NCBI GenBank assembly: GCA_002269645.1
Contig: NIVC01000031.1
Span: forward strand, 868,001-932,000
Length of the DNA: 64,000 nucleotides
DNA from: Macrostomum lignano
Taxonomy: Eukaryota
Reading direction: 5' to 3'
Shown here: positions 2,136 to 39,047 of the stretch, one piece after another
Position numbering within the stretch: position 1 is the stretch's first letter
How the letters are laid out: each line of letters opens with the position of its first letter
Position numbers and translations under genes: made by a program
The notes under the pieces: model-generated
What the model saw: the letters and a program-made list of their open reading frames with translations, nothing else
Databases searched by the model: none
Told to the model about the DNA's origin: nothing

Positions 2136-2273
2136 ATTCAAATCCTATAAAGTTAGTTTTACCTAATAAGCCCACAATGATTAACTAATAACAGTTGTAT
2201 ATTGCATTGTATACTTGAACTAACATCCCCCAACCATAAAATCCCACTGTAATCCACCCCAATAGCAGTGGTA

Positions 2274-4481
2274 ATGTTAAAATTACTCAATTTCTCTGAC
2301 TATCTTCGCGGCTGGATCGGAGCAATTGGTTTAATCTCCGTTATTAACGGAGCCCAGGCTGTCTGGAATCCAGACTTATTGGCAAGAAATGTGTACACTG
2401 GGAATCCGCAGTCCGTTACACGTCTGGCATCCAGACAGTTTGCCTTGTGGACAATGTTCTGCGGATTAGTGCGACTGGTGTTCTGTGCTAATCCCGACGA
2501 TTCCTGCATTCGCCTGTTAACTGTTACAACTTTTCTAATGACTTTGCTACATTTTCTCGGCGAGATATACGTTTGGGGCACCAGTGTGTGGACTTTTGGA
2601 GTCATATCGCCTTGCTGTATTGCAGGTATGTATTGGTACTTATTGGTGATTATTTGCGTTTGCGTCTTTAGAATCGTTTTAGAGTCTTTAAACTTTGGGT
2701 TCTACAATCGGGACTTTGGGTTCTTCAATCGGGACTTTGGGTTCTTCAATCGGGACTTTGAGCTCTTTAATCGGGACTTTGGATTCTTCAATTGGGACTT
2801 TGGATTCTTCAATCGGGACTTTGGGTTCTTCAATCGGGACTTTGGGTTCATCAATCGGGACTTTGGGCTCTTCAATCGCGACTTCTGATTCTTCAATTGG
2901 GACTTTGGGTTCTTAAATCGGAACTTTGGGTTCATCAATCGGGACTTTGGGTTTATCAATCGGGACTTTGAGCTGTTTAATCGGGACTTTGGATTCTTCA
3001 ATTGGGACTTTGGGTTCTTCAATCAAGACTTTGGGTTCATCAATCAAGACTTTGGGTTCATCAATCGGGACTTTGGATTCTTCAATCGGGACTTTGGGTT
3101 CTTCAATCGGGACTTTGGATTCTTCAATCGGGACTTTGGGTTCTTCAATCGGGACTTTGGGTTCTTCAATCAAGACTTTGGGTTCATCAATCGGGACTTT
3201 GGATTCTTCAATCGGGACTTTGGGTTCATCAATCGGGACTTTGGGTTCATCAATCGGGACTTTGGGTTCATCAATCGGGACTTTGGGCTATTCAATCGGG
3301 ACTTTGAATTCTTCAATCGGGACTTTGGGCTCTTCAATCGCGACTTCTGATTCTTCAATTGGGACTTTGGGTTCTTAAATCGGAACTTTGGGTTCATCAA
3401 TCGGGACTTTGGGTTTATCAATCGGGACTTTGAGCTGTTTAATCGGGACTTTGGATTCTTCAATTGGGACTTTGGGTTCTTCAATCAAGACTTTGGGTTC
3501 ATCAATCGGGACTTTGGATTCTTCAATCGGGACTTTGGGTTCATCAATCGGGACTTTGGATTCTTCAATTGGGACTTTGGGTTCTTCAATCAAGACTTTG
3601 GGTTCATCAATCGGGACTTTGGATTCTTCAATCGGGACTTTGGGTTCTTCAATCGGGACTTTGGGTTCATCAATCGGGACTTTGGGCTATTCAATCGGGA
3701 CTTTGAATTCTTCAATCGGGACTTTGGGCTCTTCAATCGCGACTTCTGATTCTTCAATTGGGACTTTGGGTTCTTAAATCGGAACTTTGGGTTCATCAAT
3801 CGGGACTTTGGGTTTATCAATCGGGACTTTGAGCTGTTTAATCGGGACTTTGGATTCTTCAATTGGGACTTTGGGTTCTTCAATCAAGACTTTGGGTTCA
3901 TCAATCGGGACTTTGGATTCTTCAATCGGGACTTTGGGTTCATCAATCGGGACTTTGGATTCTTCAATCGGGACTTTGGGTTCATCAATCGGGACTTTGG
4001 GTTCTTCAATCGGGCCTTGGCTTTTTCTTGTGCAAAACATGTGCGTGAAACCTTCCTTCCAATTCGCAGGCATCTCTCTCTTGCTATTCGCCTTTGAATC
4101 CCTGACTAAGGGCTCTCGCGGATCAGCAGACGACAGCCTCAACGATGGCGAAGGCGGCAGTCGAAAGATGCGCCTGGAGAGAATGATGATGCAGTCTGGG
4201 GCTGCTCCAAATCGGGGTGAGTCGCCCCTAAACCGGTTAAGAATCGCCCCTAAACCAGCCTAAGAATCGCCCCTAAACAAGTTAAGAATCGCCCCTAAAC
4301 CAGCTTAAGAATCGCCCCTAAACCAGCTTAAGAATCGCCCCTAAACAAGTTAAGAATCGCCCCTAAACCAGCTTAAGAATCGCCCCTAAACCAGCTTAAG
4401 AATCGCCCCTAAACCAGCTTAAGAATCGCCCCTAAACCAGCCCCTGAATTTTACTTTTCAGACAGTCGCAAGAATCTGTGA
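2274..4481 (+). CDS. ERG28: Ergosterol biosynthesis protein 28 homolog (3 exons: 2274-2625, 4070-4216, 4462-4481)
   Basis: The translation LRGWIGAIGLISVING...VYTGNPQSVTRLASRQFALWT...HFLGEIYVWGT...GVISP matches the ERG28/C14orf1 pattern (LRSW..S....GNT...LY.G.P..V..L.AR.FG.WT...HF..E..V.GT). Both GT-AG introns are phase 1 and keep the frame, ending ...NRDSRKNL*. Confidence 0.88.
2693..4015. repeat. Intronic minisatellite, 21-bp unit (AATCGGGACTTTGGGTTCTTC) with higher-order blocks
   Basis: Fills ERG28 intron 1. A diagnostic variant block recurs at intervals of 462 and 399 bp (22 and 19 units). Confidence 0.97.
4223..4445. repeat. Intronic minisatellite, 22-23-bp unit (AAGAATCGCCCCTAAACCAGCTT)
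   Basis: About 10 tandem copies filling ERG28 intron 2. Confidence 0.95.
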
Positions 4482-11167: not shown

Positions 11168-13441
11168 TTACAAGAGTATGCAGTCATTTTGAAAACGTTT
11201 GTCACTTACGAAAAAATGGAATAATGAGACGATAATTTTTCTTCGATTTTCAAAACATCCGTTGCCTTCAGAACTACCAATAAACTTAGCGAGAAAGTTT
11301 ACGAGCGCCCTTATTTCTGTCTGCAGCGACCGCACTGCGCAGATCCGATCATGGCAGACCTCGATGCCAAGCGAGTCGCAGCGTTGCAGCAACTTCATCA
11401 CCGCTGTTTTGCCTTCTTTCACGGACAGCGTCGAGTCTCCTTCCGGACACAGAACGCCGCCGAACTCTTCATCGCAAATCTGGTCACGTGACTCTCCTAT
11501 CGGCATTCCGACTTTGTAGTAAGCCATCATGGTCAGACACTTCTTCACTACCTCATGACAGCCCTCGAGCTCGCTGATTTTGTGCAGCACCCGTGCGAAG
11601 TCTTCAGGTGCCACAGGCTGACACTGACTCGGTGTAGCCTCTCTGTGCATCAGGGTTTGGATCTCCCACACGATATTGAAGATCTCTTTGAAATGGAAGT
11701 TCAGCTGGCCCTTGCTAAGCTGCATCACGTCAGCAAAGTATATCAGAGGCAGAAGAGCATTGTGCAGATGAACAACTCTGACGCTGTTTTTGGTCAGACC
11801 GGCTTCAAAGACCTGAGCGATCTTCTGAATGTCATCGATCGCGGTTTTGGTCTCAGTAACGATTGACCTTTTGTCTGCGTGGTCCTTCTTCAGGTACACG
11901 ACGGCATCGCGCAAGAAGAAGTGTCTCATGCACACGGCTTCGAGTCTTCGGTCTGCGGCAGCAGCTTGAGTTGGATCGCTCACCTCTTCGTTATCAAAGC
12001 TCTCCATCATAGCTACCAGCATCTCTAGCGACTGCTTCAACAGTGACAACAAGTTTTCTGGTCTCCAGTCTTCGACAGGCGTCTCGTCAAGCATGTAGAA
12101 CAGCAGGTTCTTGGCCATGTACGTCTTCAGACCGCTCACTTTAGAGCTGATGTGTCTCTTGATGAAGAACTTGAGCAGCACAAACAACTGTCCTTGGACT
12201 GTGGAGAGGTTGTGCATGACGATTCTCTCCAACAGAGTAGTGCTCACCCTCATCCGACTGCCCTCGAGTCCGGGAGGCGACGCAGATACGGCATGACACC
12301 GCGGTACTTGGAGAACCTCTGTTCGGATGGCTTCCAAAGTCTGTGTCGAAATGTGGGACCTGTAGCCGGGCGACAGCAGCTCGACGCGCGGATAGCTGCA
12401 GCAGTGCCGTGCAGAGATGGCTTCAATTTCCGGCAGTCGAAAAGTTGCCCCGTTAAATGAAAGGCAGGGCGATGGTTCTGAAAATTTCACACAATTAGTG
12501 TGGTTTTGTTTGTAGGACATAGCTCGTATAGCATACTAGACCACTGGCCTAAGCGCTCGGCTGTGGTTTGTGAAGCGCTCTGTTTTTGTTGTCATTCTCA
12601 TTGAGTCGGATGCTTCGTAAGTTCGTAGGACATTTAATGTGTGTCGCATTATTGGTGACTTAGTCATTTCTTAGTTCACCTTCACTTGTCTCTGTTTACT
12701 ATGTTTTCTCTGCCTCTCTGTCTAGTTCAATCTTGTTATTCTTCTCTCTCTGCCTTGCTAAGTTGCTTCATTCTGATTGGCTCCTCAATCTCGCCTCTTT
12801 CCTTAGTCACGCACTCCACCCCTGCTTTTATTATCTGGACGCCCCACTTACTACTTCTGTCTGTTTAATATCTTTAATATCTGTCTGTCTAATTCAGAAA
12901 CGTATATCTTGTTATTTTCTTTACAGTTGGTAAATAAAAGCCAGTCTTTTAAGCCCATTTGTCCCATTTTCAGGAATTCCCTGACTCTTACATACTAAAC
13001 TGCCGAACCTATTTATCAAGCCGATCAAGCTAAGGGTTTCAAAACTCGGATCGTTGAAAGTTCCGGCTAACCTTTTGATGCATAACACACGTGCCCGTCC
13101 TCGTAGTCAGCCACCTTGCAGCCTTTCAAACAATTGCTCGTCTCCGAGGCACTGCAGTCAGCTGGAATGTGAACCGAGTTCGACTTCAGCACGAATGTGA
13201 TGTCAATATCCGAGTCTGAGTCGATGCTGCCGTCAATTTTGCTCAAGCAGCTGCCCCAGCCGTCGCAGAAGCTGCCGAACACGAAGAAGGTATCTTGGGA
13301 CTTGAGCAGCAACCTCAGCAAGTCTTCAAGAGCCAAGGCTACTCCGCTCTGAGCTGCTGCATTTGAGGACTTGAAGCCCGCAGTCCTCATGGCAGCTGAC
13401 AGGGCTCGGCTCTGGTCAGTGAATCGCTCTTCATCGGTCAT
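11168..13441 (-). CDS. cGAS-like receptor / Mab-21 family nucleotidyltransferase, copy A (exons 13441-13072, 12477-11168; ~559 aa, 3' end possibly spliced at 11210)
   Basis: Exon 1 has FGS-X20-DIDI. A phase-1 splice (AAAG|GTTAG ... TTTCAG|AA) puts I-E-A 59 residues later. The Mab-21 C-lobe reads CHAV...RMRVSTTLLE...VLLKFFIK...GLKTYMAKNLLFY...W...LLSLL...CMRHFF. Confidence 0.82.
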
Positions 13442-13714
13442 TTCAAGACCGAACACAGAAAACGCAGCCTTTCGGTGCTAGCACCTAGATTTGCTATTTT
13501 TCTGTGAGATTTTCTCGGTAGCTTTTTAAACATATCTAGGTACCTTAGAGGCGGTACTATATAACAATACGCTCGTACACTATGCAAACCGAACACTATA
13601 TGCTTTATAAAGAGGCCATTTTGCCTGTAGTTATTCAAGTTGATGCTTCTTTAATTCTTTTGTTTCAAAATTTTGATCCAAATATACTGATGGCTGTTCG
13701 AATTTCGAATGAAG

Positions 13715-14165
13715 CGAATGATGCTGATGATGATGATGATGCTGATGATGATGATGCTGATGATAGTGATGCTGATGATAATGATGCTGAGATGATGATA
13801 ATGATGGTGATGGTGATGATGATGATAATGAAGATGATGATAATGATGATAATGATGTTGATGATGATGATGATGATGATGATGCTGATGCTGATGATGA
13901 TGATGATGATGCTGAGATGATGATACTGATGATGATGATGCTGAGATGATGATAATGATATTTCTGATAATTATGATGATGCTGAGATGATGATAATGAT
14001 GGTGATGATGATAATGATATTGCTGATGATGATGATGATGCTGAGATGATGATAATGATGGTAATGATGATAATGATGGTGGTGATGATGATGATGATGA
14101 TGCTGATGATGATGATGCTGAGATAATGATGATGCTGAGATGATGATAATGATGGTGATGATAAT
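13715..14165. repeat. (GAT)n microsatellite, imperfect
   Basis: Direct reading; it explains the poly-His/Met/Asp ORFs. Confidence 0.97.
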
Positions 14166-15260
14166 TAGCTCTGCCAGACAATTACACAAAGGAAGTATCG
14201 TTGATCATTGTAAGCTTTTTATAGGCATGGTGGGTTGTTGCAGAAGGAAACAAAATGTATTTTCTAGATATTCATGAATTATTAAGTATATTTGAAACAG
14301 AATCAAGTCAGAACCTCTTATTGAAACAGAATCAACTAGTTTAAGTTGTCCCTGGTCAGAACTTTGTTTGATCATCTACATCAGACGTCGACAAAATTTT
14401 TACTTCAAGAGCCGGATAAAGAATCAACAATAGATCATTACTGCGGGTCAGATGAGAGAGTGGAAAGGAGAGGTAATGGAGGAGATAAAAGATGGAGGAG
14501 ATGACAGAAGAGAGAAGAGGCGAGATGAGAAATGCGATGAGATAAGAGATGAGTAAAAAGCTGAAAGAGGAGACAAAAGACAGAGGAGAGAACTAAGAAG
14601 AGACTAACCTTAAGCGCGTCGGATTGCTATCGTGAAGCTTCAAAGGACCCGAAGACCGGGCAGCGAGACTTTACAGCCCGGAGTTTGCTGACCCCAGGTC
14701 TAAGTGAAGTCGCGAGTTCTTATTTCAAATGTGCTTAAATACTTTTATTAGGTGACGATTAAACATCATCATTGTTGCCTAATGCATCGTACATGTGTCT
14801 TACGAGTCTATGCTTGAAACCTACTTCTACTTCTATCTGTTCAGTACGTGTATTCTGAAATTTTAGTACCAAAGGACTGGGTATTAGACTCCCATTCCGA
14901 AGAGATTGCCCTTAATATTAATAATATAATTGCAAGGAGGACTAGCTAAGGTCACCCTGCCGCAACGTCATAAGCAAAATCATCGCACGTCGCTTCCAGC
15001 GTCGGCAGCTACGAGCAGAAGCAAGCCCGGATACTGTATACAAGCCGACAACTCATACACACGCTCCGTCAAGGTGTACAGCCGCCCTGACTTTCTAATC
15101 GTCTGGCATGTACACTCTCCGTGCCTTGAAGAATTCACGAAACAGATCGACGCTGGATATTGGCTCTTGATCGGCGAAGAGTTTTGAGTCGAAAGGAATT
15201 AGTGTCAACCTGCCTTCAAGGATATATATCGTCGAAGAGTGTCCAAACATCCATTGAGTC

Positions 15261-15790
15261 TACTAGAAACAATGCAGGGAAAGTCAGACAAGGAGATTCT
15301 GATACTGACTGGAAGAGCTAAAATTGCACTCGTAAAACTGCGTGGACAACATCTGGAAAGCAAAAAACATCCACATGAAAAATAAAATGCTGCTAATGAT
15401 ATTGGTAGTCATGGCAAATCTTCTCTATGCGTGTGAGTGCTGGGCAATGGAGAAGAAGTATGAAAAGCAACTGAGATCTTTCGAGATGAAGACTTACAGA
15501 TCTATGATGGAGGCCTTGTGGATCTGATCAAGAGAAGGAAATTCCGCTCCTTCAGGCATGGTGCGAGAAGTGATGGAGCGCTGAAGGCCGTGGTTGAAGT
15601 TGGTGGTGAGGGGCGAAGGGACAGAGGCAGGCCACAAGGTGATTGGACAGGCAGTCTAGCTGATGGAGTGGAGTGGAGTGGAGAGTGGATGGTGCAGCGG
15701 ATTGTCTTGGATCGAAGGAGATGGAGATTCGCTGTCGAGAAATGGATACACCAACGGCCATAACCGTTTACCGACCTAATAATGATGATA
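15261..15790 (+). mobile_element. 5'-truncated degenerate RTE-like LINE fragment
   Basis: IWKAKNIHMKNKM...LLYACECWAMEKKYEKQLRSFEMKTYR resembles the LINE RT C-terminus. It ends in a TAATAATGATGAT tail and is flanked by AAACATCCATTGAGTC at 15245 and 15806. Confidence 0.7.
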
Positions 15791-16567
15791 GCCAGGAAAC
15801 GTCTTAAACATCCATTGAGTCGACTAGCAGCTGCCGAGGTCGATTGCGCCTAAAAACTCGGGTCCTGCAAGAAATGGCGTGATGTATCTGTGCAGTATTA
15901 GTCTGGGATGGCCTCTTTCCCCAGCCAGCGATGCTCACATTTGACCCTTTTTTGGCTGGAAACAGTCCAAGAGTCTCTGGGACTCTGTCTCTTGTTTTCA
16001 TCTTGCAAGGCACACTTTGAAGGGCCTTCCTGAACAGATTTATTGGCGCCGAGGACCCACAAACCCACCCTCTAATGTGTCAGTGTAACTCCGTGCTGAT
16101 GTTCGCTTGCTAGGAACGGTTTCCCTTGCGTCCTTGGGTCCTCACGCAGGGAGGGATTTTTTCTCTTGAGGAACCTGCCGCTTGGTTTGGGGAGCAGTGT
16201 ATTGCAGCCTTTTGCCTGTGTTCTGCAGTAAGTTCACCTTTTTCACTTCCAGTCAATAGCTTCAACGAGTAGCCGAAGGGACTTGCGAAAATACTTCGTT
16301 GGAAGTTACGGAAGTTATTGGTCGTCATGGGCTAGCGTAATGAGCGGTCTCGCCCGCTTCCACGCTTCATCCGCCGGACGATGCCGCCTGCAACTCAATC
16401 AAGTAATTCAACTAGCAGCTGCTCTCACAGAGTCTTGGGTTCCGAGGTTGGTCGAGCCTTTGTTAGTTATCTTTGGCGTGTGTTCAGCAGCTCGTACATG
16501 TGTTCAGAAAAATACGTAAGTTACAGATAAATACGTAGCAAAACTCCTGTGCGAATTGTAGGTAATC

Positions 16568-17510
16568 AGTCATACACATGGGTGATCAGTCAGACACATG
16601 GGTGAACAGTCAGAGACATGGGTAATCAGTCAGACACATGGGTGAACAGTCAGACACATGGGTAAACAGTCAGAGACATGGGTAATCAGTCAGACACATG
16701 GGTGAACAGTCAGACACATGGGTGAACAGTCAGACACATGGGTGAACAGTCAGAGACATGGGTAATCAGTCAGACACATGGGTGAATAGTCAGACACATG
16801 GGTAATCAGTCAGACACATGGGCAATGAGACAGACACATGGTGAACAGTCAAACATATGGGCAATGAGACAGACACATGGGTGAACAGTCAGACACATGG
16901 GTGAACAGTCGACACATGGGTGAACAGTCAGAGACATGGGTGAACAGTCAGACACATGGGTGAACAGTCAGACACATGGGTGAACAGTCAGACACTTGGG
17001 CAATGAGACAGACACATGGGTGAACAGTCAGACACATGGGTGAACAGTCAGACACATGGGTGAACAGTCAGAGACATGGGTAACCAGTCAGACACATGGG
17101 TGAACAGTCAGACACATGGGTGAACAGTCAGACACATGGGTGAACAGTCAGACACATGGGTGAACAGTCAGACACTTGGGCAATGAGACAGACACATGGG
17201 TGAACAGTCAGACACATGGGTGAACAGTCAGAGACATGGGTGAACAGTCAGAGACATGGGTAACCAGTCAGACACATGGGTGAACAGTCAGACACATGGG
17301 TGAACAGTCAGACACATGGGTGAACAGTCAGACACATGGGTGAACAGTCAGACACATGGGTGAACAGTCAGACACTTGGGCAATGAGACAGACACATGGG
17401 TGAACAGTCAGACACATGGGTGAACAGTCAGACACATGGGTGAACAGTCAGAGACATGGGTAACCAGTCAGACACATGGGTGAACAGTCAGACACATGGG
17501 TGATCAGTTT
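16568..17510. repeat. Minisatellite, 20-bp unit (CAGTCAGACACATGGGTGAA)
   Basis: About 47 tandem copies lying between the two cGLR genes. Confidence 0.97.
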
Positions 17511-18074
17511 GAACATGACCAAAACCAAAACCAACTTGAACCAAATGGGTAACTATACTTATTTCTTTATTTTATCGTCCACACTATATAAATTTGCAAT
17601 TAGCAAATAAGCTTTAAACATTGAAGTATTAAAAAAACTGTTTACAAGGAACAGAACTAAACATTCTTGAGACTGCAAAGCTGAACTTTATAAAATATAG
17701 GAATTTACTGAGTAACAAGAAGTGGCTAACAACATGTAGAAGACACATCGTCGTAAATATCACAAATGTCTTGATTCATCCAATTAACTTAATTATGAAG
17801 TAAGCTTTATAGGCCCGCGTACTCCCAGACATAAAAAAGGCTATCTGGAAATATCTTTATGTATTGTTAATAAATCTAAATACGAGTACAAATCAGATTG
17901 TATTGAACCTATCCACTTTCCAAGTTGATCTCCTAAGTTTCAGTGAATTCAAAAGCATCACTGATTGTTGTCATTTTTGTCAGTCTGAAAAATTAAAACA
18001 AAAAAATGAAACACGAGTGTATAATACATACGAATTATAAAAATTGAGATATGGAATCAAGCCTACGTTTGACA

Positions 18075-20281
18075 TTACTGGGACTGTAGTGCTTCCTCCT
18101 CTTCGTCATCTGACCAGTCTCTGAGGGCTGGACAATCTTCGGTACCGACAACTTCGCAAAATATCATGAGGATATTCCGCGCGAAATTCACTTCACTAGA
18201 ACGCCAGCCATCTCCCTCAGTTCTAAACACCTGAAGTTGAAATAAATAATTAAATAATTAAATTCCAAAACCTCCTGACGGTTTAAATAAAGCTGGTTTA
18301 GAACTGATTACCTGAAAAGGAAAATTTGTCGCGAGTAGAGCTGCTGATGCGAAATCTAGCACATGTAAAGCAGTGTCGGTGGGTAAACTACTTCTTCTGA
18401 AGTTTTGCAGAAATGCGGACAACACCTGAAACAGTTGCCAAATTTCTGTCTGCAGCGACCGCACTGCGCAGATCCGATCATGGCAGACCTCGATGCCAAG
18501 CGAGTCGCAGCGTTGCAGCAACTTCATCACCGCTGCTTTGCCTTCTTTCACGGACAGCGTCGAGTCTCCTTCCGGACACAGAACGCCGCCGAACTCTTCA
18601 TCGAAAATCTGGTCACGTGACTCTCCTATCGGCATTCCGACTTTGTAGTGAGCCATCATGGTCAGACACTTCTTCACTACCTCATGACAGCCCTCGAGCT
18701 CGCTGATTTTTTGGAGCACCCGTGCAAAGTCTTCAGGTGCCACAGGCTGACACTGACTCGGTGTAGCCTCTCTGTGCATCAGGGTTTGGATCTCCCACAT
18801 GATACCGAAGATCTCTTTACACTTGAAGTTCATCTCGCCCTTGCTAAATTGCATCACGTCAGCAAAGTATATCAGAGGCTGAAGAGCAATGTGCAGATGA
18901 ACAACTCTGACGCTGTTTTTGGTCAGACCGGCTTCAAAGACCTGAGCGATCTTCTGAATGTCATCGATCGCGGTTTTGGTCTCAGTAACGATTGACCTCT
19001 TGTCTGCGTGGTCCTTCTTCAGGTACACGACGGCATCGCGCAAGAAGAAGTGTCTCATGCACACGGCTTCAAGTCTTCGGTCTGCGGCAGCAGCTTGAGT
19101 TGGATCGCTCACCTCTTCGTTATCAAAGCTCTCCATCATAGCTACCAGCATCTCCAGCGACTGCTTCAACAGAGACAACAAGTTTTCTGGTCTCCAGTCT
19201 TCGACGGGCGTCTCCTCAAGCATGTAGAACAGCAGGTTCTTGGCCATGTACGTCTTCAGACCGCTCACTTTAGAGCTGATGTGTCTCTTGATGAAGAACT
19301 TGAGCAGCACAAACAACTGTCCTTGGACTGTGGAGAGGTTGTGCATGACGATTCTCTCCAACAGAGTAGTGCTCACCCTCATCCGACTGCCCTCGAGTCC
19401 GGGAGGCGACGCAGATACGGCATGACACCGCGGTACTTGGAGAACCTCGGTTCGGATGGCTTCCAAAGTCTGTGTCGAAATGTGGGACCTGTAGCCGGGC
19501 GACAGCAGCTCGATGCGCGGATAGCTGCAGCAGTGCCGAGCAGGAATAATGTCGATATCCGACAAGCGTAGGTCATCGCCCCCGAGAGGTAAGCTTGGCG
19601 TACTTTCTAAAATACGAGATTCACAGCGTACTAAATTGTAACTAGAAGCGGCTAGAAGCGTCGTAAAATTCCATCTACGAGCGTAATTCCCTTTCTTGGT
19701 GTCCCAGGAGACGCATGTCATGTGTTAAAATGCTGTAACTCAGTTTGACACATGAGCTCTAACTGGGGACGCCGCTTTCCAATAGGTCAGGGTGCAGGTG
19801 AGGGATCCCATAGATAGGCGCACAGCACCACATTCTAAACACTCCCTCATCATCACTAAACCGTTTGTGTCATTGCAGGAAAGAATTATAATGATCGTTT
19901 CTTGGACCCACCTTTAGACTGATAAGACACGTGCCCGTCCTCGTACTCAGCCACCATGCAGCCCTCCAAGCACTGACTCGTCTCCGAGGCACTGCAGTCA
20001 GCTGGAATGTGAACCGAGTTCGACTTCAGCACGAATGTGATGTCAATATCCGAGTCTGAGTCGATGCTGCCGTCAATTTTGCTCAAGCAGCTGCCCCAGC
20101 CGTCGCAGAAGCTGCCGAACACGAAGAAGGTATCTTGGGACTTGAGCAGCAACCTCAGCAAGTCTTCAAGAGCCAAGGCTACTCCGCTCTGAGCTGCTGC
20201 ATTTGAGGACTTGAAGCCCGCAGTCCTCATGGCAGCTGACAGGGCTCGGCTCTGGTCAGTGAATCGCTCTTCTCCTTCCAT
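18075..20281 (-). CDS. cGAS-like receptor / Mab-21 family nucleotidyltransferase, copy B (exons 20281-19912, 19606-18312, 18230-18075; ~606 aa)
   Basis: Same FGS-X20-DIDI motif, then I-D-I-I-P-A 59 residues later after a phase-1 splice (AAAG|GTGGG ... TTTTAG|AA). A phase-0 81-nt intron (CAG|GTAATC ... TTCAG|) opens a 51-codon acidic last exon. Confidence 0.82.
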
Positions 20282-20941
20282 TTCAAAATATGCCGCCAAA
20301 GTGACCGTTTTTTGAATGACTATTTATATAATACGCCAACCTTCTCCACAGTGTAGCTTTAAAACGATTCAAATTCAGAGAGGTTTTACACTGAGCTGAC
20401 TGTTAAAGATAACCTGTTCTCAAATAGACGGTACTTTAATTTAGAAATTCTGCGAGGAGTCTTTACAATCGAGTGGAACAATAAAGAAATAGATAAAAAA
20501 AATAAATTTAACCATTTAACGAATTAATGTATGTACAGACGGCTTTATATTCTATTCATAATCTATCAGCGTTTTGAATAAATATAGTACTGGCACTTTT
20601 CACGTGAAGTTATTTTAAAATAGGTTTCTTTGATCGACACACAGAGAAGATTAACAAAAGTATCCTTCTGCTAGAGTAGAGATAGGTTAGAAAATTATTT
20701 TTTTAAACACTTACAAAATTAATAAGGTACTTTTTTCTTTGAAATAAAATATTTTTTGACACTTTGCTGTACGAGTTCAATTACAGTACTAGAATCAAAA
20801 TACTGCAAACTATATATTTTAACTATGTATAGCTATAGCACTAGATAAAAGGCTTATCGCAAAATTAAAAAAAATTAGCCAGATGAGCGTTCATTTTTCC
20901 CAAGCGATGGTTCACAAGCGCGCATTATTCGCATCACTTAG

Positions 20942-27627
<6,686 letters not shown>

Positions 27628-28654: not shown

Positions 28655-30859
28655 ATGTCATTAAAGGTTAAAATTGCTAGCAGATACTCCCATGTAACAC
28701 TAAATTTATGGTAAGTTTTTTAAATTAATACTGTTTTATATACCCCAAAATTATATTAGTTTATATATATAGTTCTATAATTTGAAGTCTATAACCACTC
28801 TGAAAAATTGTTTGAAATCTAGAAACTATATCTACCAAGAGTACAACTTATAGTATTTATTGATTTATTTTTAGGGCAAGCTGCAAAGCATTGGCTGATA
28901 AATATGCAAAAGTCAACTTGGGCCTGGTAAGAAACTTTTCATGTACAAAATTGCATGATTTTATAAGAGTAATCATAGAAGAATTGATTGACACATTGTT
29001 CAAGTCAACACAATGAAATAGATTAATAAGTTGACCATGACATTATGCTACTCATAATTGTCTGTAGCTATCAAAAAGTTCAAAGTTTTAAATGTCTTCT
29101 CATTAATTTCTTTTTTTACTATTTGAAAGTTGAAATTACTGAATATTTGATGTAAATGTTTAAATCAATCAAAGATGCCTTTATTCAACCAAAATTTGTG
29201 TTAAAAAAGTGAGGGAAAAAACTAATAGTCTACAACCCTCTACCCACGCAGGGTGCTCCAGATTACAATCCACCAGTTGAATTGTCTAAAGCTCTCACTT
29301 CTGTCCTAGAAGATGCCATCAGTGACTGCAAGATATCAGCTGCTACGCATCAATATGCACCATTGGTTGGGCATCCAGAACTTATTTCAGCTTTGGCTGA
29401 TGTTTACACAACCGAGATGAGCCATAAAATTCGGCCTGAAGATGGCTGTTTGTCTGTAGGCATTGGTGCTCAAGTGAGTTGTATGTTATTGTTGCACTTA
29501 AAAATAATTTCAGAAGGGCTGAGGTTATATAGATATTTTTTTCGTTAGCTAATTTATGTCCACGCCGCTGACTGCGGAACAGGCACGTACCCGCGTATTA
29601 TATCTACTTACGCAGGAACACACAAAAGCAGCATAGAGTGTACAATAACAGACATTCTATCATCAGACATTGTAAACAATCTGCGCCTATGAGATTTGCA
29701 TTAAACGCCCCGACGAACGTCCCTGCACGAGCATCTAATTAATGCGGCCGTTTCATTCCAGGGCTGCATATTTAATGTGATCAACGCTCTAGTGAACCCG
29801 GGCGACGAAGTGGTTATAATTGACCCGCACTACGACTGCTACCCGTCTATGGTTCAAGCTGTCGGTGCTAAGCCAGTGTTCGTACCTCTGTTGCCACCAA
29901 AGTCCTCAACAGATGGCGCAACAAGTGTCAATGCAAACGATTGGCAGTGGGATCGTTACCAATTAGACAGCGTATTTTCGCAGCGAACCAAACTGTTAGT
30001 GCTGAATTCTCCACAGAATCCGTTGGGGAAAGTGTACAACCGCGATGAGTTGTTGGTATTGGCGGAGCTGTGCCAAAAATACGATGTCGTTTGCTTAAGC
30101 GACGAGGTCTACGAATGGATGGTTTTAACTGACAGCGGTGAACGTTTGAGGATGGCTACAATGCCAGGTATTTATGCGACAATTTTTGTACTGACTCCGA
30201 CGAATGTGGCTGCAAACAGATAAAAATGATAATTTATCTTTTACAATCAATTACATTCAGGTATGTGGGACCGAACTATCACGGTGGGCAGCGCTGGAAA
30301 ATGTTTTAACATCACTGGCTGGCGCGTAGGCTGGTGCGTCGGGCCTGCCGCGCTGATTAGTCACGTGGTCACGGTTCAAAGCGAAGTAGTTTTCAGCGTA
30401 GCCAGTCCTCTGCAAGCCGCTATTGGTCGGGTGTTTCGCTCTGAACTCAACAATATTAAAGGCAAGGACGATTCCTGCCTAGCCAAGCTGAGAAGTCATG
30501 TAAAAGCGAATCGCGATCTCGCCGTGGTTGAGTTGTCACGCATGGGCCTGTCCTGCGTGATACCCAGCGGCGGCTGGTTCATGCTGGTTCCCGTTGCTCC
30601 CAGATTACTGCCGTTGCTAAGGGATACATCAGCTTCCAAAGGGCCAGCTTCGGACGTGTCAATTGTTGAACTGATAACGAAGAAGTTCCGCTTGGCAACT
30701 ATTCCAGCGTCGATGTTCTATTCGGAAGAATTTCGTTGCACAGTTGGTCACGGCTACTTGCGATTGTGCTTAAATAAGCGACGGGAGACCCTGGTGGAGG
30801 GCTTGAAGCTTTTAGAGGCTGCTTTGGCTGCCGCTGATGCTTTGGCTGCGTCGTCTTAA
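28655..30859 (+). CDS. KYAT: Kynurenine--oxoglutarate aminotransferase (KYAT/CCBL family), divergent paralog a (exons 28655-28710, 28875-28926, 29252-29473, 29762-30167, 30261-30859)
   Basis: NLGLGAPD, NPGDEVVIIDPHYDCY, LNSPQNPLGKV, SDEVYEWM and PLP-lysine motif SAGKCFNITGWRVGW. All introns are GT-AG and frame-consistent. Confidence 0.88.
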
Positions 30860-31843: not shown

Positions 31844-33739
31844 ATGACAAGCCGTTTCAAGATTGCAAAACGTTTGGAAGCCTTTTCCAAAGTTGAAAAT
31901 ATATGGTTTGTACTTGATGTTCTGATTAATTTTTAGTAATGTCAACTTCAATTGGAGTTGACAAGATAAACTAAAATTTGATAACGGATAATTTCAGGGT
32001 GATGTACTCTACTCTTGCTGTGAAACACAATGCTCTCAATTTGGGACAGGTGAGTTATGTAGCATTAAAAAATCATGTCAAACACGAATCTGTAGCATGA
32101 TTTTGGTCTTTAGTGGCTTTCTAAAATAAGTCGAATTAATTTTTGAATAATGCTAACTAAAGTTTTTCTCTCCAATTCGGTGTATCTCTACTAAGAGTAG
32201 TACAACTGTTCCTTCAGGGCTTCCCAGACTATGCGCCACCAAAGTCTGCAACCGATGCACTTGCTTCAGTGGCCAATTCCTCTAACCCGATGTTGCACCA
32301 GTACACCAGGGGATACGTGAGTAGATTATTCAACATCAAGCCTTAACGCAGACTCGCTTGAGATGCCTATGAAGAACTTTCCACCGTTTTAGGGTCATCC
32401 CAGACTGGTAAATGCTCTGGCCAAGCTGTACACCACAGAGCTGCAGAATCCAATTGATCCGTTGAAGAATATTCTAATCTCCAACGGTGCCTACATGTGT
32501 CTTTATTCCGCTATCCACTCTCTAGTTGATGAAGGCGACGAAGTAGTCATCATTGAGCCGTTTTTCGACTGCTACGAGCCAATGGTCCGTTCTGCCGGTG
32601 GGCAGCCGGTCTTTGTTCCGCTGCGACCATCCGCTGATGACAGGTCGACCACTCAAAACCAACGCCATCGTTCTGCGCAGGACTGGCGCTGGGATGTCGA
32701 GCAGCTCCGGGCCGCCTTCACGCCTCGAACCAAAATGTTGATAATGAACACGCCAAATAATCCAATTGGCAAAGTGTTCGACTCTGACGAATTGAAATTG
32801 CTTGCCGAGCTGTGCTGCAAGCACGATGTTTTGTGTCTTAGCGACGAAGTGTACGAATGGCTGGTAAGATTGATCGGTTAGTTAGGAGTTGTTGCGGTTT
32901 AATGCGTACGTATTAGTACATGTAGCTACGTGTTTGCATAGGTTGATGATTATCTCTGGCAAATCAGTGTTAGTCAAGTCAGTCATTTCGTAGGGGGGGC
33001 TCTGGGTGCTGCTGCATATCAAAGCGACAGCCGACCTGCAGCCACGAGTATTCAAGCCCTCGTGTCCATTCCGTCGACCCTTGAGCCCTTACACGCACAC
33101 GGTTACGTACTAAATCACACGCTCACATAGAGTGCACAGCGGCCCTGACTTTCTCGTCTATAGGCGCTTTATTCGATACACTCTGCATCATTGGGGTTCA
33201 TCACTTTGTAAGGCCAACTTTTGTCCACCAGACCCAGGTTACCCTGCACCGAGCACAAAATCTAACCCGGATGCGGGAGTCAGACGCGTTACCTCTGAGC
33301 TGCTCAACCGCTCTTTCTGCATCCTTCTCTATAGTAGATCTTAACACGGAAGTAAATATTTAGGCAGGTTACAATGCAAACAGCCATGAATAGATCAGCT
33401 CGAAGCTCCTTTTGTAGTGGTCACGAATTTAACGGCCGTTGCTATTTACGTTGTAGCCTAGTGGCTAGAGCGTCGGACTCACGACTTGAAGGTCGGAGGT
33501 TCGATTCCCGATCCCACTGGAACAATTTGTGTCCTTGAGCAAGACACTTAACTCTCTGCATTGCTTCAGCTCACCCAGCTGTAAAATGGGTGCCAGCATT
33601 AGCTGGGGTAATTGAGGGTGTGTGTGTGGCGACCCCCCAGTCCTTGGACTGAACAGCCGTACGCAGCCTTCAGATGTGCCGCGCAATAGCTGCGGCTGAG
33701 CTGTCGGTTGCACATCTGCCCATTGGGGCAGGTGTAATC

Positions 33740-35576: not shown

Positions 35577-36037
35577 GCTTGTCTATCTGTCTGTCTGTCT
35601 GTCTGCCTGTCTGTGTTTCTGTCTGTCTGTCTGTCTGTCTGCTTGTCTGTCTGTCTGTCTGTCTTAGTATCTGTCTGTCTGTCTGTGTCTGCCTGTCTGT
35701 CTGTCAGTCTGTCTGTCTGTCTGTCTGTCTGTCTGTGTCTGTCTCTCATCTCACCAGCAACTCGCCGCCTCAGATCGTGGACATCTCTAGCCTGCCGGAG
35801 CCGCCGCCGGCCACCGGCAGCCCAGACGATCCTCTTGGCGAGCTTCGGGACGCCCGACTGGTCCGCTGGCTGACCCGGGAGCGCCAGCTGGCCACAATCC
35901 CCTGCTCCTGCTTCTACGGCCAAGCCGACAGGCATCTGGGCGAGAATTTCATTCGCCTGTGCTTCATCAAAGAGGACGAAACGATTGAGCAGTTTGGCAG
36001 AGGTCTGCTCAATTGGTTGAAGCCGGGGTCGTGCTAG
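31844..36037 (+). CDS. KYAT: Kynurenine--oxoglutarate aminotransferase (KYAT1/3-like), canonical paralog b (exons 31844-31905, 31998-32049, 32218-32316, 32393-32863, 34057-34254, 34920-35084, 35774-36037)
   Basis: [67 protein letters not shown] and FIRLCFIK are all canonical. Splice phases are consistent. Confidence 0.92.
33455..33775 (+). mobile_element. tRNA-derived CORE-type SINE with (TAT)n tail
   Basis: A-box TAGCCTAGTGG and B-box GGTTCGATTCC, followed by GTGTCCTTGAGCAAGACACTTAACTCTCTG...CTGTAAAATGGG, which resembles the MIR/CORE consensus, and a (TAT)n tail. Confidence 0.82.
34310..34625. repeat. Intronic minisatellite, 16-bp unit (TTGACTCTTTGTCCAC)
   Basis: About 19 near-perfect copies in KYAT-b intron 5. 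Confidence 0.97.
35140..35745. repeat. (TCTG)n microsatellite in KYAT-b intron 6
   Basis: Direct reading. Confidence 0.97.
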
Positions 36038-36868: not shown

Positions 36869-38419
36869 CTAAACAGCAGCTAAGCAAAAGCGTATTTTGT
36901 TTAGTCTCTTGTGTTGCATCTCGCGCTTGAATAATACAGCCATCCAGTTCATGAATGACTCCTTCCGACAGCAGCCAGCCAGTGTTCTGCACGTTTGCGG
37001 GTTCGCGCCACTGATCTCGAGTTCCAGTTGGCCGACTTCAGTGAACCGGAAGTTGGTGCGCAAGTTTGCTAGGCTCTCTTCTATTCCGGTATCCGAGTCC
37101 GATACTTGTCGAGGTTCTTCCTCTTCCAACAAAAAACTGGAGACATTGTCCGCGTGTAGTTTGAGCACCTCCTCGATGCGGCACTTCTCCTCGTCGGTGA
37201 GCTCGCTGCTGCCGTCAGTTGATACCGAATAGAGCAGCTTGACGACTCTTCGCACGCTTGGTATCTGCGGGCAAACTCTGTTACCAGGCAAGCCGGTGTC
37301 TGTTGGAGTCGGCTCTTCGGCATCGGCCTCAGCCTCCGTGTCGATGAGCTGCGGCAGATCTGCACCATCAGGTGTTGACTCGCTGCTGCCTTGCAGAGCT
37401 GGTCTCGGATTCTCGATGGCAAGTTTAGACTCGATCAGGTTAGCATCGTGCCTCTGGTCTGGGCTCCAACTGAGCAGATTCTCAACCAGCCTCCATAGAT
37501 TATCTGTCAACGGGAATACTGACTTACTGCGATCGAGGACCACCTTCCAGTCTTCGTTGCTAGTTGGCCTCGACAGCGTCATGGCTCCGAAAGCCTCTGG
37601 TAGGTCTAATTCCAAGTCTGGAGTGCTTGGAATTTCCAACCGTTGAAAGAGACGCTCTTCGTAGCTGTCGAAAGGCCTCTGTCGATAGATGGATTCGCAA
37701 ATCAGTATGCCAAACGAATAACAATCAGCTTTAAAATCGTAGCGCAGCTTCTTGCCGCCGTTACGCCAGTTGTGCACTTCTGGCGCCATCCAACGCCATG
37801 TGCCGATGTCAACCGTCATACCATCGGGATCGTAGTAGCGGCTCATGTCAAAGTCGCACACCTTGCATAGCCTTTTTCCTTCGAATAGGAGCACGTTGGA
37901 ACTCTTAAGATCGCGGTGCACTATACCATTATTATGCAGGTACGCCATGGCTTCGGCTACCTGGCGAAGCCAATTAATACAGTGATACCAGGTATAGCCA
38001 CCATCTCCAGTCGGGTAGGTGAACTCACTGTTGCTCTTCCTCTTGGCTGTGAGAGCAAACTGGAGGCTGCACTCGCCGAGCTCCATAAAAATGACGGGCC
38101 AACTCTTTGGATTATTCTCATCAACTTCCAGGGTGCAATCCAGCACGGTGACAATATTCTTGTGATCGCACTTGGACAAAAGCTCATATTCTTTCTGGCA
38201 TAGTTCCTTCATGTCCTTTTTGCTAATACTTCCGCAGTACTGCTTCATAGCAACGAAATCGCCTTTAGAAAGCAATGCGATCGTGTCGCCCTCCAATAAG
38301 AAGTCCTCCTGCAGCTCCTTTTTGTAGATTCGATGATTGGATCGGGCCATCAGCGAGCGTCCTGTCTCGCTGTTTTCAATCGAGACGCACCGATTCAGAC
38401 CTTTATTAGAACCTGCCAT
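36869..38419 (-). CDS. Intronless TAK1/MAP3K7-like (TKL group) protein kinase with DFD motif, paralog 1 (~516 aa)
   Basis: VAMK, alphaC Glu (KEYELL), YTWYHCINWLRQVAEAMAYLH (cf. TAK1 [21 protein letters not shown]), HRDLKSSN, KVCDFD, GTWRWMAPE and KADCYSFG. First ATG at 38419. Confidence 0.85.
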   Translation of the reverse strand: MAGSNKGLNRCVSIENSETGRSLMARSNHRIYKKELQEDFLLEGDTIALLSKGDFVAMKQYCGSISKKDMKELCQKEYELLSKCDHKNIVTVLDCTLEVDENNPKSWPVIFMELGECSLQFALTAKRKSNSEFTYPTGDGGYTWYHCINWLRQVAEAMAYLHNNGIVHRDLKSSNVLLFEGKRLCKVCDFDMSRYYDPDGMTVDIGTWRWMAPEVHNWRNGGKKLRYDFKADCYSFGILICESIYRQRPFDSYEERLFQRLEIPSTPDLELDLPEAFGAMTLSRPTSNEDWKVVLDRSKSVFPLTDNLWRLVENLLSWSPDQRHDANLIESKLAIENPRPALQGSSESTPDGADLPQLIDTEAEADAEEPTPTDTGLPGNRVCPQIPSVRRVVKLLYSVSTDGSSELTDEEKCRIEEVLKLHADNVSSFLLEEEEPRQVSDSDTGIEESLANLRTNFRFTEVGQLELEISGANPQTCRTLAGCCRKESFMNWMAVLFKREMQHKRLNKIRFCLAAV

Positions 38420-39047
38420 TCTACTCAGTTCGCTTGTTTGCACTGTTGGAATAGTTTAAAATGCTATTATCTTGCTTCACTATTTTATGTGTGTTCACTA
38501 TTATTGCTCTTGCGGACAACTGCATGTAGCACTTGCCTTCAAGGTCACAGCGCTTTAGCTTTTATGCGATATTCTGTACAGTAAACTGAGCCGTGGTAAA
38601 TGAGGAGGAGGGGGGGGGCAGAATTTTCACTCGCAAAAGAGAACAAGCCACTTTGACAGTGTCATTGCGGCCGGCTTGCTGAAACACCATATTGTACGCA
38701 AAATCTGGGGTTTGGGGCTTAAGTCTCTTTAGTTTCTGTTAACAACCCCAGTGGAAACCTGTCTGCCCCTACAGACGGTATTGTGCGCACATGTGTACAC
38801 TCGCTCTTTCCACAGTTAGTCAGCCTAGACTAAATCTAATAGCGTTTGTTAAAACACCGCGCGCACACACCTCAGATAGCGACTCATTTTCTGCTCAGCA
38901 GAGTACAGTGGATGAAAAGTTACAAAAAAATAAGTGGAACTTCCCTTGCAAAGCAGTTAACATAAAAGACCTTGCTTGTCTTTTTTAGCTCTTAGCTATA
39001 CTGAATTGTTTTTTTCTGAATAGCTAATAACAGATTTGGTTCGAAAA

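What the first reader, a model, noticed from the sequence alone, without database searches (positions are those of the whole stretch)
11168..20281. Tandem pair of catalytically complete cGAS-like receptors (cGLRs) differing at the third active-site acid
Seen: after splicing, both genes give FGS-X20-D-I-D-I-X59-h[DE]h, with IEA in copy A and IDI in copy B, followed by a Mab-21 C-lobe and a long helical extension. No cGAS-type zinc ribbon is evident. Established: cGLRs (Mab-21 superfamily) with motif h[QT]GS-X8-20-[DE]h[DE]h-X50-90-h[DE]h are innate pattern-recognition receptors that make cyclic dinucleotides for STING. Inference: these may be uncharacterised flatworm-type cGLRs with different ligands or products; the residue before GS is F here rather than Q/T.
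Basis: partly seen in the sequence, partly recalled or inferred. Interest (0 to 1): 0.72.

Follow-up and report, generated by a model that had tools for sequence, protein, structure and literature searches.

The report
Tandem flatworm cGAS-like receptor genes
Two neighbouring genes of the flatworm Macrostomum encode enzymes of the cGAS-like receptor (Mab-21) family with intact catalytic residues; they are new copies of a flatworm gene family that is already catalogued, and its activity, trigger and downstream receptor are still unknown.

Summary
Two minus-strand, GT-AG spliced genes lie at 11168-13441 (copy A, 559 aa) and 18075-20281 (copy B, 606 aa). Both read FGS-X20-DIDI-X59-h[DE]h, with E142 in A and D142 in B.

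All close relatives are Macrostomum lignano "Mab-21 domain-containing" proteins. A bridged profile aligns the family to human cGAS over 300 columns (99% probability). It pairs G56-S57, D78/D80 and residue 142 with cGAS G212-S213, E225/D227 and D319. The cGAS zinc thumb falls in a gap. AlphaFold models find only cGLR, cGAS, MAB21L1 and MB21D2 structures.

The family is not new. Li et al. 2023 listed M. lignano members as cGLRs and cloned five for their screen, one 41% identical to copy B. None carries the table's active-enzyme label.

New here:
- The catalytic cores are acidic (pI 5.3-5.8), unlike nucleic-acid-sensing cGLRs (pI above 8.5).
- E at the third acid occurs only in the A lineage.
- The two copies are mosaics: exons are 96-97.5% identical, while the intron, the flanks and the 21 codons around the third acid are unrelated or saturated.
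- Copy A lacks the family's C-terminal end.

Enzyme activity, ligand and a STING partner remain untested.

The parts
13072..13441 (-). Copy A, exon 1 (codons 1-123 plus 1 nt): N-terminal spine helices, G56-S57 (13271-13276), D78 (13208-13210), D80 (13202-13204)
   Evidence: 95.8% nt identity to copy B exon 1
12478..13071 (-). Copy A, intron 1 (594 nt, GT..AG, phase 1)
   Evidence: junction confirmed by database protein P0018; no similarity to copy B's intron beyond shuffles
11168..12477 (-). Copy A, exon 2 through the stop: third acid E142 (12422-12424), Mab-21 C-lobe, helical extension. A lineage-specific tail follows residue 512 (below ~11313).
19912..20281 (-). Copy B, exon 1: G56-S57 (20111-20116), D78 (20048-20050), D80 (20042-20044)
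19607..19911 (-). Copy B, intron 1 (305 nt, GT..AG, same position and phase as in A)
   Evidence: junction matches P0002
18312..19606 (-). Copy B, exon 2: third acid D142 (19551-19553), Mab-21 C-lobe, helical extension
18231..18311 (-). Copy B, intron 2 (81 nt, GT..AG)
   Evidence: junction matches the C-termini of P0001 and P0002
18075..18230 (-). Copy B, exon 3 with the acidic C-terminus and stop codon. No counterpart was found downstream of copy A.
12415..12477 (-). Copy A, first 63 nt of exon 2 (codons 124-144, including E142). This patch is saturated against copy B (19544-19606): 8 of 21 residues identical.
13718..14162 (.). (ATG)n microsatellite just upstream of copy A, in the spacer between the two genes
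16567..17508 (.). 20-bp satellite, 47 copies, in the spacer between the two genes

Best explanation
The two genes are tandem paralogues of a Macrostomum-expanded clade of cGAS-like receptors (Mab-21 superfamily nucleotidyltransferases).

Shown:
- Each encodes a bilobed cGAS-type fold.
- A GS activation loop precedes a strand carrying D78 and D80, and a neighbouring strand carries the third metal-binding acid (D142 in B, E142 in A).
- These residues sit at the positions of cGAS G212-S213, E225/D227 and D319.
- There is no zinc thumb.
- A family-specific, mostly helical C-terminal extension follows the core.

Inferred:
- On binding an activating ligand, the enzyme condenses two NTPs into a cyclic or linear nucleotide second messenger that a downstream receptor reads.
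- The catalytic cores are acidic (pI 5.3-5.8), so the ligand is probably not dsDNA or dsRNA. That would explain why relatives did not stand out in a screen that used those ligands.
- The pair is an old duplication whose coding exons were recently homogenised, most simply by gene conversion. The conversion left the intron, the flanks, the 21 codons around the third acid and the 3' end unconverted.
- Copy A has a different, shorter C-terminus and may be functionally reduced.
For: - Origin and family. All close homologues are M. lignano "Mab-21 domain-containing" proteins. An exhaustive profile search gives 75 cluster representatives at E<=1e-30 and 970 at E<=1e-3. Nine of ten distant hits scanned pass Pfam Mab-21_C and seven also pass Mab-21.
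- Catalytic equivalence. A bridged profile against human cGAS 157-522 gives probability 99.0, E 6.5e-18 and 300 aligned columns, with GS, DxD and the third acid on the cGAS catalytic residues. The cGAS sequence was verified against PDB 4lew.
- Fold. The copy B model has core pLDDT of about 80-97. The copy A core model has pLDDT 84.5 and pTM 0.87. The top 50 listed PDB matches are all Cv-cGLR1, Sp-cGLR1, cGAS, MAB21L1 or MB21D2 (E 4e-8 to 1e-5, TM ~0.5).
- Selection. 59 of 70 family domains keep the full triad. For the core, codons 145-345 of A versus B give dN/dS 0.12.
- Precedent. Li et al. 2023 list M. lignano members as cGLRs, including ankyrin fusions, and cloned five; PAA57558 is my P0006, 41% identical to B.
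- Ligand. Core pI is 5.76 (A) and 5.27 (B) against 9.07 for human cGAS. Li et al. report pI above 8.5 for nucleic-acid sensors and propose non-nucleic-acid ligands for acidic cGLRs.
- Mosaic. Exon blocks are 95.8% and 97.5% identical with dS 0.05-0.08. Intron 1, 600 nt upstream and 600 nt downstream score no better than shuffles. Codons 124-144 are saturated.
Against: - No activity data exist. The five M. lignano relatives in Li et al.'s Table S3 carry no "active" label.
- The strict h[QT]GS motif is not met (F55), and the GS-to-DxD loop sits at the upper limit of 20 residues.
- Pfam scores on the proteins themselves are weak: Mab-21_C is below the cut-off (20.7 and 21.8 against 24.1) and the N-terminal Mab-21 model does not hit.
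- MAB21L1 also keeps a nominally complete site without known activity.
- STING and cGAS are reported lost in Schistosoma and Schmidtea, and I could not establish STING in Macrostomum.
- TM-scores of ~0.5 are moderate, and I could not measure the distances between the three acids in the model.
- dN/dS rests on few substitutions: 10 in the core and 24 in the extension.
Confidence: 0.55

Rival explanations
1. The proteins are Mab-21-fold proteins that no longer make a nucleotide signal. They would act as scaffolds or ligand binders, as proposed for MAB21L1/2 or MiD49/51, and the conserved acids would be kept for nucleotide or metal binding only.
For: - MAB21L1 is among the best structural matches.
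- Li et al. note that Mab21L1/2 have nominally complete sites without known products.
- None of the five M. lignano proteins in their screen is labelled active.
- The [QT] before GS is missing.
- STING is absent from the other flatworms examined.
Against: - The triad, the GS, and Y243, which the alignment places opposite the Tyr of cGAS's SSYHVK motif, are conserved across a fast-evolving, highly duplicated family: 59 of 70 domains are complete and Y243 is Y in 84 of 88.
- The proteins are not Mab21L1/2 orthologues. Pfam PF03281 does not hit, and identity in the structural alignments to MAB21L1 is about 10-14%.
- The screen used only dsDNA and poly I:C, ligands an acidic cGLR is not expected to bind.
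Confidence: 0.25
2. The proteins are template-independent RNA nucleotidyltransferases or oligoadenylate-type synthases (ncPAP/TUTase- or OAS-like) that make linear products rather than cyclic dinucleotides.
For: - The N-lobe motif FGSxxDGWGxxL...SDIDI looks like the hGS...DhDh signature of PAP/TUTase enzymes (my own knowledge).
- Pfam gives a faint MTPAP-like palm match (E 0.28).
- One database fragment (P0018) is named "NTP_transf_2 domain-containing".
Against: - No PAP, TUTase or OAS structure appears in the top 50 Foldseek matches of either model.
- The C-lobe aligns to the cGAS/Mab-21 helix bundle, not to a PAP-associated domain.
- The full-length profile match to cGAS has 99% probability.
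Confidence: 0.08
3. Copy A is a decaying partial duplicate, a pseudogene in the making, and only copy B is functional.
For: - Homology to B and to all relatives stops after residue ~512 (window ~11279-11313).
- The 47-residue tail is not significantly similar to B's (793 of 1000 shuffles score as high).
- No exon-3-like sequence lies downstream.
- A carries the E142 variant, seen in only 3 of the 80 family domains that cover this position.
- Database A-type entries are only fragments.
Against: - The 559-codon frame is open and the splice sites are intact.
- The A-type sequence recurs in independent M. lignano gene models (P0017, P0018).
- Core dN/dS against B is 0.12.
- E is an allowed third acid in the published motif.
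- The tail could still splice from good GT donors to an exon I did not recognise.
Confidence: 0.25

Closest known systems
Macrostomum lignano cGLR candidates in Li et al. 2023 (PMC9980059): Table S3 nos. 89-93 (PAA86972, PAA45980, PAA57558, PAA93208, PAA68676) and Table S2 ankyrin fusions
   Same: Same family: hGSxxEGWGxxL...SD[IV]D, hDh...CCxYP, MRVSTTLLER, LKTYxAKNLLFYMLDETP, CMxHFFLRD, followed by the helical extension. PAA57558 equals P0006, which is 41% identical to copy B over 80% of its length at E 6e-92. It also has F before GS.
   Different: Copies A and B are a separate, ankyrin-less subclade. Their nearest database relatives are UniProt A0A1I8HU34 (95%) and A0A1I8H961 (92%). Copy A has E at the third acid and a truncated or novel C-terminus.
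Human cGAS (catalytic domain 157-522)
   Same: Bilobed Mab-21 NTase fold. GS loop, E/D-x-D and third D at equivalent columns. WRLSFS matches MRVSTT, SSYHVK matches LKTYMAK, and NYFIPEFNLF matches RHFFLRDAVVY.
   Different: About 14% identity. No zinc thumb and no unstructured basic N-terminus. Acidic rather than basic (pI 5.3-5.8 against 9.07). The GS-to-DxD loop is 20 residues rather than 11. There is an extra C-terminal extension of about 210-260 residues.
Cv-cGLR1 (PDB 8gjw) and Sp-cGLR1 (PDB 8gjy), invertebrate cGLRs with known products
   Same: Cv-cGLR1 is the best structural match of the copy A core (E 4e-8, TM 0.54-0.55). Sp-cGLR1 matches both models and the family profile (E 1.8e-3).
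   Different: Those enzymes are nucleic-acid sensors with pI above 8.5. Sequence identity is only 14-17%.
cGLR-like proteins of about 650-750 aa with C-terminal TPR (distant hits P0109-P0163); I take them to be molluscan from their resemblance to the oyster and scallop entries in Li et al.'s Table S3
   Same: They share the hGSxxEGT...SDxD N-lobe motif, hDhhxAhxCxxWP around the third acid, the WRISFS and SYHxKT motifs, and a long helical C-terminal extension.
   Different: E-values are only 1e-11 to 1e-15. These proteins pass the Pfam Mab-21 thresholds and carry recognisable TPRs. The Macrostomum extension has no Pfam match.
MAB21L1 (PDB 5eom, 5eog)
   Same: Top structural match of the full-length copy B model (E 2.4e-6).
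   Different: Not an orthologue. Pfam PF03281 does not hit and identity is 10-14%. MAB21L1 is a single-copy developmental gene, whereas this is a large lineage-specific expansion.

Membership tests
cGLR (criteria of Li et al. 2023) | Strict activation-loop motif h[QT]GS | tested here: not met
   Both copies read V-F-G-S, with F55 at the [QT] position. Across the family this position is V 44, F 21, T 10.
cGLR (criteria of Li et al. 2023) | Relaxed G[S/G] activation-loop motif, used in their final curation | tested here: met
   G56-S57 are present in both copies. They align to cGAS G212-S213.
cGLR (criteria of Li et al. 2023) | [DE]h[DE]h located 8-20 residues after GS | tested here: met
   D78-I-D80-I follow 20 residues after S57, at the upper limit. 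They align to cGAS E225-F-D227.
cGLR (criteria of Li et al. 2023) | Third acid h[DE]h, 50-90 residues further on | tested here: met
   I-E142-A in A and I-D142-I in B, 59 residues after DIDI. They align to cGAS D319.
cGLR (criteria of Li et al. 2023) | [quoted passage not shown] | tested here: met
   The bridged profile against human cGAS aligns columns 7-343 to 3-363 at probability 99.0 and E 6.5e-18. Without the bridge only the C-lobe aligns.
cGLR (criteria of Li et al. 2023) | Predicted structural homology to known cGLR or CD-NTase enzymes | tested here: met
   For both models the top 50 listed Foldseek PDB matches are all cGLR, cGAS, MAB21L1 or MB21D2. TM is about 0.5. Distances between the three acids could not be measured.
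cGLR (functional definition) | Ligand-dependent synthesis of a nucleotide second messenger | not testable with these tools
   This needs recombinant protein and NTP assays. The relatives in Li et al.'s screen carry no active label.
cGLR-STING pathway | A STING (PF15009) receptor encoded in the same genome | tested here: inconclusive
   A search with the human STING cyclic-dinucleotide-binding domain collected only 357 candidates. Those listed are vertebrates, one hemichordate and unnamed short contigs. The literature reports loss in Schistosoma and Schmidtea, not in Macrostomum.
cGAS proper | Zinc-ribbon thumb (H390, C396, C397, C404) and a basic DNA-binding surface | tested here: not met
   The thumb aligns to a gap. 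Core pI is 5.3-5.8 against 9.07 for cGAS.
Pfam Mab-21 (PF03281) and Mab-21_C (PF20266) | Score at or above the curated gathering threshold | tested here: not met
   PF20266 scores 20.7 (A) and 21.8 (B) bits against a cut-off of 24.1. PF03281 gives no hit. Paralogues and distant relatives do pass.
ncPAP / TUTase | PAP-associated C-terminal domain and a Pol-beta-type fold match | tested here: not met
   Only a faint MTPAP palm match (E 0.28). No PAP or TUTase structure appears among the top 50 matches.

The most novel reading that the evidence does not exclude
Macrostomum kept and expanded an acidic clade of cGLRs, often fused to ankyrin repeats. These would sense a non-nucleic-acid (for example cationic or protein) ligand and signal through a receptor other than canonical STING. 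That would be a STING-independent cGLR pathway in a phylum otherwise thought to have lost cGAS-STING. The locally unconverted D/E142 patch would mark functional divergence between the tandem copies.
Probability: 0.12. Interest if true: 0.75.

Novelty: new member of a known kind. Interest (0 to 1): 0.33.

Why it matters
Flatworms are usually described as having lost cGAS-STING, on the evidence of Schistosoma and Schmidtea. Macrostomum is the exception: it carries a large, partly ankyrin-fused cGLR expansion that is catalogued but has no known ligand, product or receptor.

This pair adds two members with intact catalytic residues. It also gives a concrete lead: the acidic cores suggest that dsDNA and dsRNA are the wrong ligands to test. 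M. lignano is amenable to RNAi and transgenesis, so it could serve to find what acidic cGLRs sense and what reads their signal.

As a genome feature, the finding itself is ordinary: new paralogues of an annotated family.

Tried and rejected
- Direct Pfam scan of both proteins: only a sub-threshold Mab-21_C hit.
- Single-sequence phmmer against PDB sequences: nothing relevant.
- hhalign of the Macrostomum-only profile against human cGAS: only the C-lobe aligned, at 2.3% probability. Adding 24 distant Mab-21 relatives as a bridge solved this.
- The second word-index homologue search, run with the family profile, found nothing outside Macrostomum except two short contigs. The exhaustive HMM search was needed.
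- STING search with the human STING binding domain collected only 357 candidates, essentially vertebrates. It says nothing about Macrostomum.
- Li et al.'s Table S5 has no Macrostomum row and their Table S4 holds only pI data.
- Homology of copy A's C-terminal tail to copy B's was rejected: 793 of 1000 shuffles score as high.
- A tblastn search with 12 family C-termini found no missing exon downstream of copy A.
- Smith-Waterman alignment of intron 1 and of 600-nt flanks scored no better than shuffles. A simple recent segmental duplication is therefore rejected.
- tRNA and Rfam scans of the window found nothing.
- A literature search for cGLR together with Macrostomum returned no papers.

Full report
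**What is there.** The region holds two protein-coding genes on the minus strand of a eukaryotic genome. Reading the sequence, listing ORFs and locating splice signals gives these models:
- Copy A: exon 1 13441-13072, a 594-nt GT..AG intron, exon 2 12477-11168; 559 aa.
- Copy B: exon 1 20281-19912, a 305-nt intron, exon 2 19606-18312, an 81-nt intron, exon 3 18230-18075; 606 aa.

The outer coordinates equal those of the finding. Independent database gene models contain the same junction peptides: P0018 for A, and P0002 and P0001 for B.

The stated motif is exact. F55-G56-S57 is followed by 20 residues, then D78-I-D80-I, then 59 residues, then I-E142-A in A and I-D142-I in B.

**Whose genes they are.** The nearest proteins are all from the free-living flatworm Macrostomum lignano and are named "Mab-21 domain-containing protein". 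The two closest are 95% and 92% identical to copy B, and the paralogues that follow are 37-53% identical. Several paralogues carry N-terminal ankyrin repeats. Two database fragments (P0017, P0018) are of the A type. None of the hits is flagged as encoded by the window itself. The window is therefore M. lignano, or a very close relative, in an assembly whose models are not in the database.

**Family membership.** Tested directly, the two proteins give only a sub-threshold Pfam Mab-21_C hit (20.7 and 21.8 bits against a cut-off of 24.1). The N-terminal Mab-21 model does not hit, and a single-sequence PDB search finds nothing.

A profile of the family core (alignment A1) was searched exhaustively against 1.84 billion representatives. 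It finds 75 proteins at E<=1e-30 and 970 at E<=1e-3. Of ten distant hits (E ~1e-11 to 1e-15) that I scanned, nine pass Pfam Mab-21_C, seven also pass Mab-21, and some carry C-terminal TPRs. The same profile hits the cGAS C-lobe (E 4e-4) and Sp-cGLR1 (E 1.8e-3) among PDB sequences.

I then built a bridge alignment from the Macrostomum cores and 24 of the distant relatives. I compared it by hhalign with human cGAS 157-522. I had typed that cGAS sequence from memory and verified it as 100% identical to PDB 4lew_B. The result was probability 99.0, E 6.5e-18 and 300 aligned columns across both lobes.

In that alignment:
- G56-S57 pair with cGAS G212-S213.
- D78 and D80 pair with E225 and D227.
- Residue 142 pairs with D319.
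- MRVSTTLLER pairs with WRLSFSHIEKE.
- LKTYMAK pairs with SSYHVKT.
- The cGAS zinc thumb (H390-C405) lies opposite a gap.

**Predicted structure.** The AlphaFold2 model of full-length copy B has mean pLDDT 70.9. The core (residues 1-350) is mostly at 80-97 and the extension is poor. The model of the copy A core has pLDDT 84.5 and pTM 0.87.

Both show the expected topology. Two long N-terminal helices lead to strand 51-56, then the GS loop, then a strand starting at residue 78 that carries D78 and D80, and later strand 140-149 with the third acid.

Foldseek against the PDB lists only Mab-21 superfamily structures among the top 50 for each model:
- MAB21L1, cGAS and Sp-cGLR1 for copy B (E 2e-6 to 1e-5).
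- Cv-cGLR1 first for the copy A core (E 4e-8, TM 0.54-0.55), then cGAS, MAB21L1, Sp-cGLR1 and MB21D2.

No PAP/TUTase or OAS structure appears. I could not obtain coordinates, so the distances between the three acids were not measured.

**Conservation.** I aligned 89 family sequences to the core HMM. Of 70 domains that cover all five catalytic positions, 59 have the full G-[SG] / [DE]x[DE] / [DE] set. The third acid is D in 69 domains and E in only 3, which I take to be copy A and the two A-type fragments. The residue before GS is V (44), F (21) or T (10), so the strict h[QT]GS is a minority state in this clade.

**What was already known.** [quoted passage not shown]

Their Table S3 lists five M. 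lignano proteins cloned for the biochemical screen (nos. 89-93). No. 91, PAA57558, is identical over the stretch printed in that table to my P0006, which is 41% identical to copy B, and it has FGS. Their Table S2 lists M. lignano accessions with Ank_2 domains.

Sp-cGLR1". That column is blank for the five Macrostomum entries. The family is therefore catalogued but functionally uncharacterised. The screen used only poly I:C and a 45-bp dsDNA.

**A lead on the ligand.** The catalytic cores are acidic, with pI 5.76 (A) and 5.27 (B) against 9.07 for the human cGAS catalytic domain. Li et al. report pI above 8.5 for dsDNA- and dsRNA-sensing cGLRs. They propose that acidic cGLRs respond to positively charged, non-nucleic-acid ligands. 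That fits the lack of a noted activity for Macrostomum proteins in their screen.

**Receptor.** Wu et al. 2014 report loss of both cGAS and STING in Schistosoma mansoni. A 2026 study found neither in Schmidtea mediterranea. M. lignano retains other antiviral genes lost elsewhere, such as Mx with at least six copies. My one remaining database search, with the human STING binding domain, gathered only 357 candidates, almost all vertebrate. It is uninformative for Macrostomum. Whether a STING exists there is open.

**How the two copies relate.** They are not a simple recent duplication.
- blastn aligns only 13070-13446 with 19910-20286 (95.8%) and 11313-12414 with 18442-19543 (97.5%).
- The first block is exon 1, from 5 nt before the ATG to the first 2 nt of the intron. 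The second is exon 2 from codon 145 to codon ~512.
- Intron 1, 600 nt upstream and 600 nt downstream score no better than shuffled sequence.
- Within the aligned blocks dS is 0.05-0.08. In the 21 codons between them (124-144, including the third acid) synonymous sites are saturated and only 8 of 21 residues match.
- The intron position and phase are identical in the two copies.

The simplest reading, which is an inference, is an old duplication whose coding blocks were recently homogenised by gene conversion. The D/E142 difference sits in an unconverted patch. Why the block ends coincide with the ATG and with the exon 1 donor is unexplained.

Core dN/dS is 0.12 (10 substitutions) and extension dN/dS is 0.84 (24 substitutions), so these are small numbers.

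**Copy A's end.** After residue 512 copy A reads 47 residues that are not significantly similar to B's tail. No exon-3-like sequence lies downstream. Good GT donors exist in that tail, so an unrecognised exon is possible. Otherwise A is C-terminally truncated relative to its family.

**Wider family.** Many strong hits are 800-1600 aa with long ankyrin arrays before the cGLR domain. One (P0024) has two complete cGLR domains. The helical extension, with motifs FHPF, LPDCA, GIxCP and DSAWKF, is family-specific and has no Pfam match. Copies A and B carry a divergent, shorter version.

**Verdict.** The genes are new members of a known, catalogued but biochemically uncharacterised flatworm cGLR clade. 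Activity, ligand, product and receptor remain to be shown.

Noticed in passing
window 13070-13446 / 19910-20286 and 11313-12414 / 18442-19543: Nucleotide homology between the two genes is confined to coding sequence. It starts 5 nt before the ATG and stops 2 nt into intron 1. It resumes 63 nt into exon 2 and ends at codon ~512. I have no explanation for why the block ends coincide with the ATG and the exon 1 donor.
   Followed up: partly
window 16567-17508: A 20-bp satellite (consensus CAGTCAGACACATGGGTGAA), 47 copies at 88% match, lies in the spacer between the two genes.
   Followed up: no
window 13718-14162: A degenerate (ATG)n microsatellite of ~150 units lies about 280 nt upstream of copy A's start codon.
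   Followed up: no
window 15342-15763: Short plus-strand ORFs (e.g. ...LLYACECWAMEKKYEKQLRSFEMKTYRSMM...) look to me like the C-terminal tail of a non-LTR retrotransposon reverse transcriptase. This is from memory and was not tested.
   Followed up: no
window 36869-38443 (-) and 39036-40553 (+): Two divergently oriented, apparently intronless ORFs of 524 and 505 aa. Each has a protein kinase domain (Pfam Pkinase, E 9e-37 and 1e-30) and an unannotated C-terminal half.
   Followed up: partly
window 29777-30859 (+), 32462-32881 (+), ~35700-36037 (+): Exons of class I/II aminotransferase genes (Pfam Aminotran_1_2). They appear to form a tandem pair, and the second is interrupted by a CTGT/LSVC-type microsatellite.
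   Followed up: partly
window 43090-44367 (-) and 50023-50565 (-): Glycine-rich ORFs. One matches the ALK/LTK glycine-rich domain (PF12810, E 4e-12), and a second similar copy lies about 6 kb away.
   Followed up: partly
window 55228-58172 (+): Retrotransposon pol ORFs with reverse transcriptase (RVT_1) and integrase (rve) domains, in the most GC-rich part of the window (GC 0.63).
   Followed up: partly
window 21282-23036 (-): A cysteine-rich ORF that a long (CAGA)n microsatellite (22066-22747) runs through in frame, giving LSVC repeats. An (ACTG)n array lies at 21313-21526 and a 26-bp repeat at 23165-23662.
   Followed up: no
window 2268-2888 (+): An ORF with an Erg28-like domain (PF03694, E 2e-22), followed by a tandem-repeat array.
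   Followed up: partly
database proteins P0023, P0021, P0024: P0023 belongs to this animal cGLR family but is labelled as from a Kangiellaceae bacterium MAG, on a 1065-bp contig, which looks like eukaryotic contamination. P0021 is its near-identical JGI counterpart. P0024 (1346 aa) has two complete cGLR domains, either a real tandem-domain protein or two merged tandem genes.
   Followed up: partly
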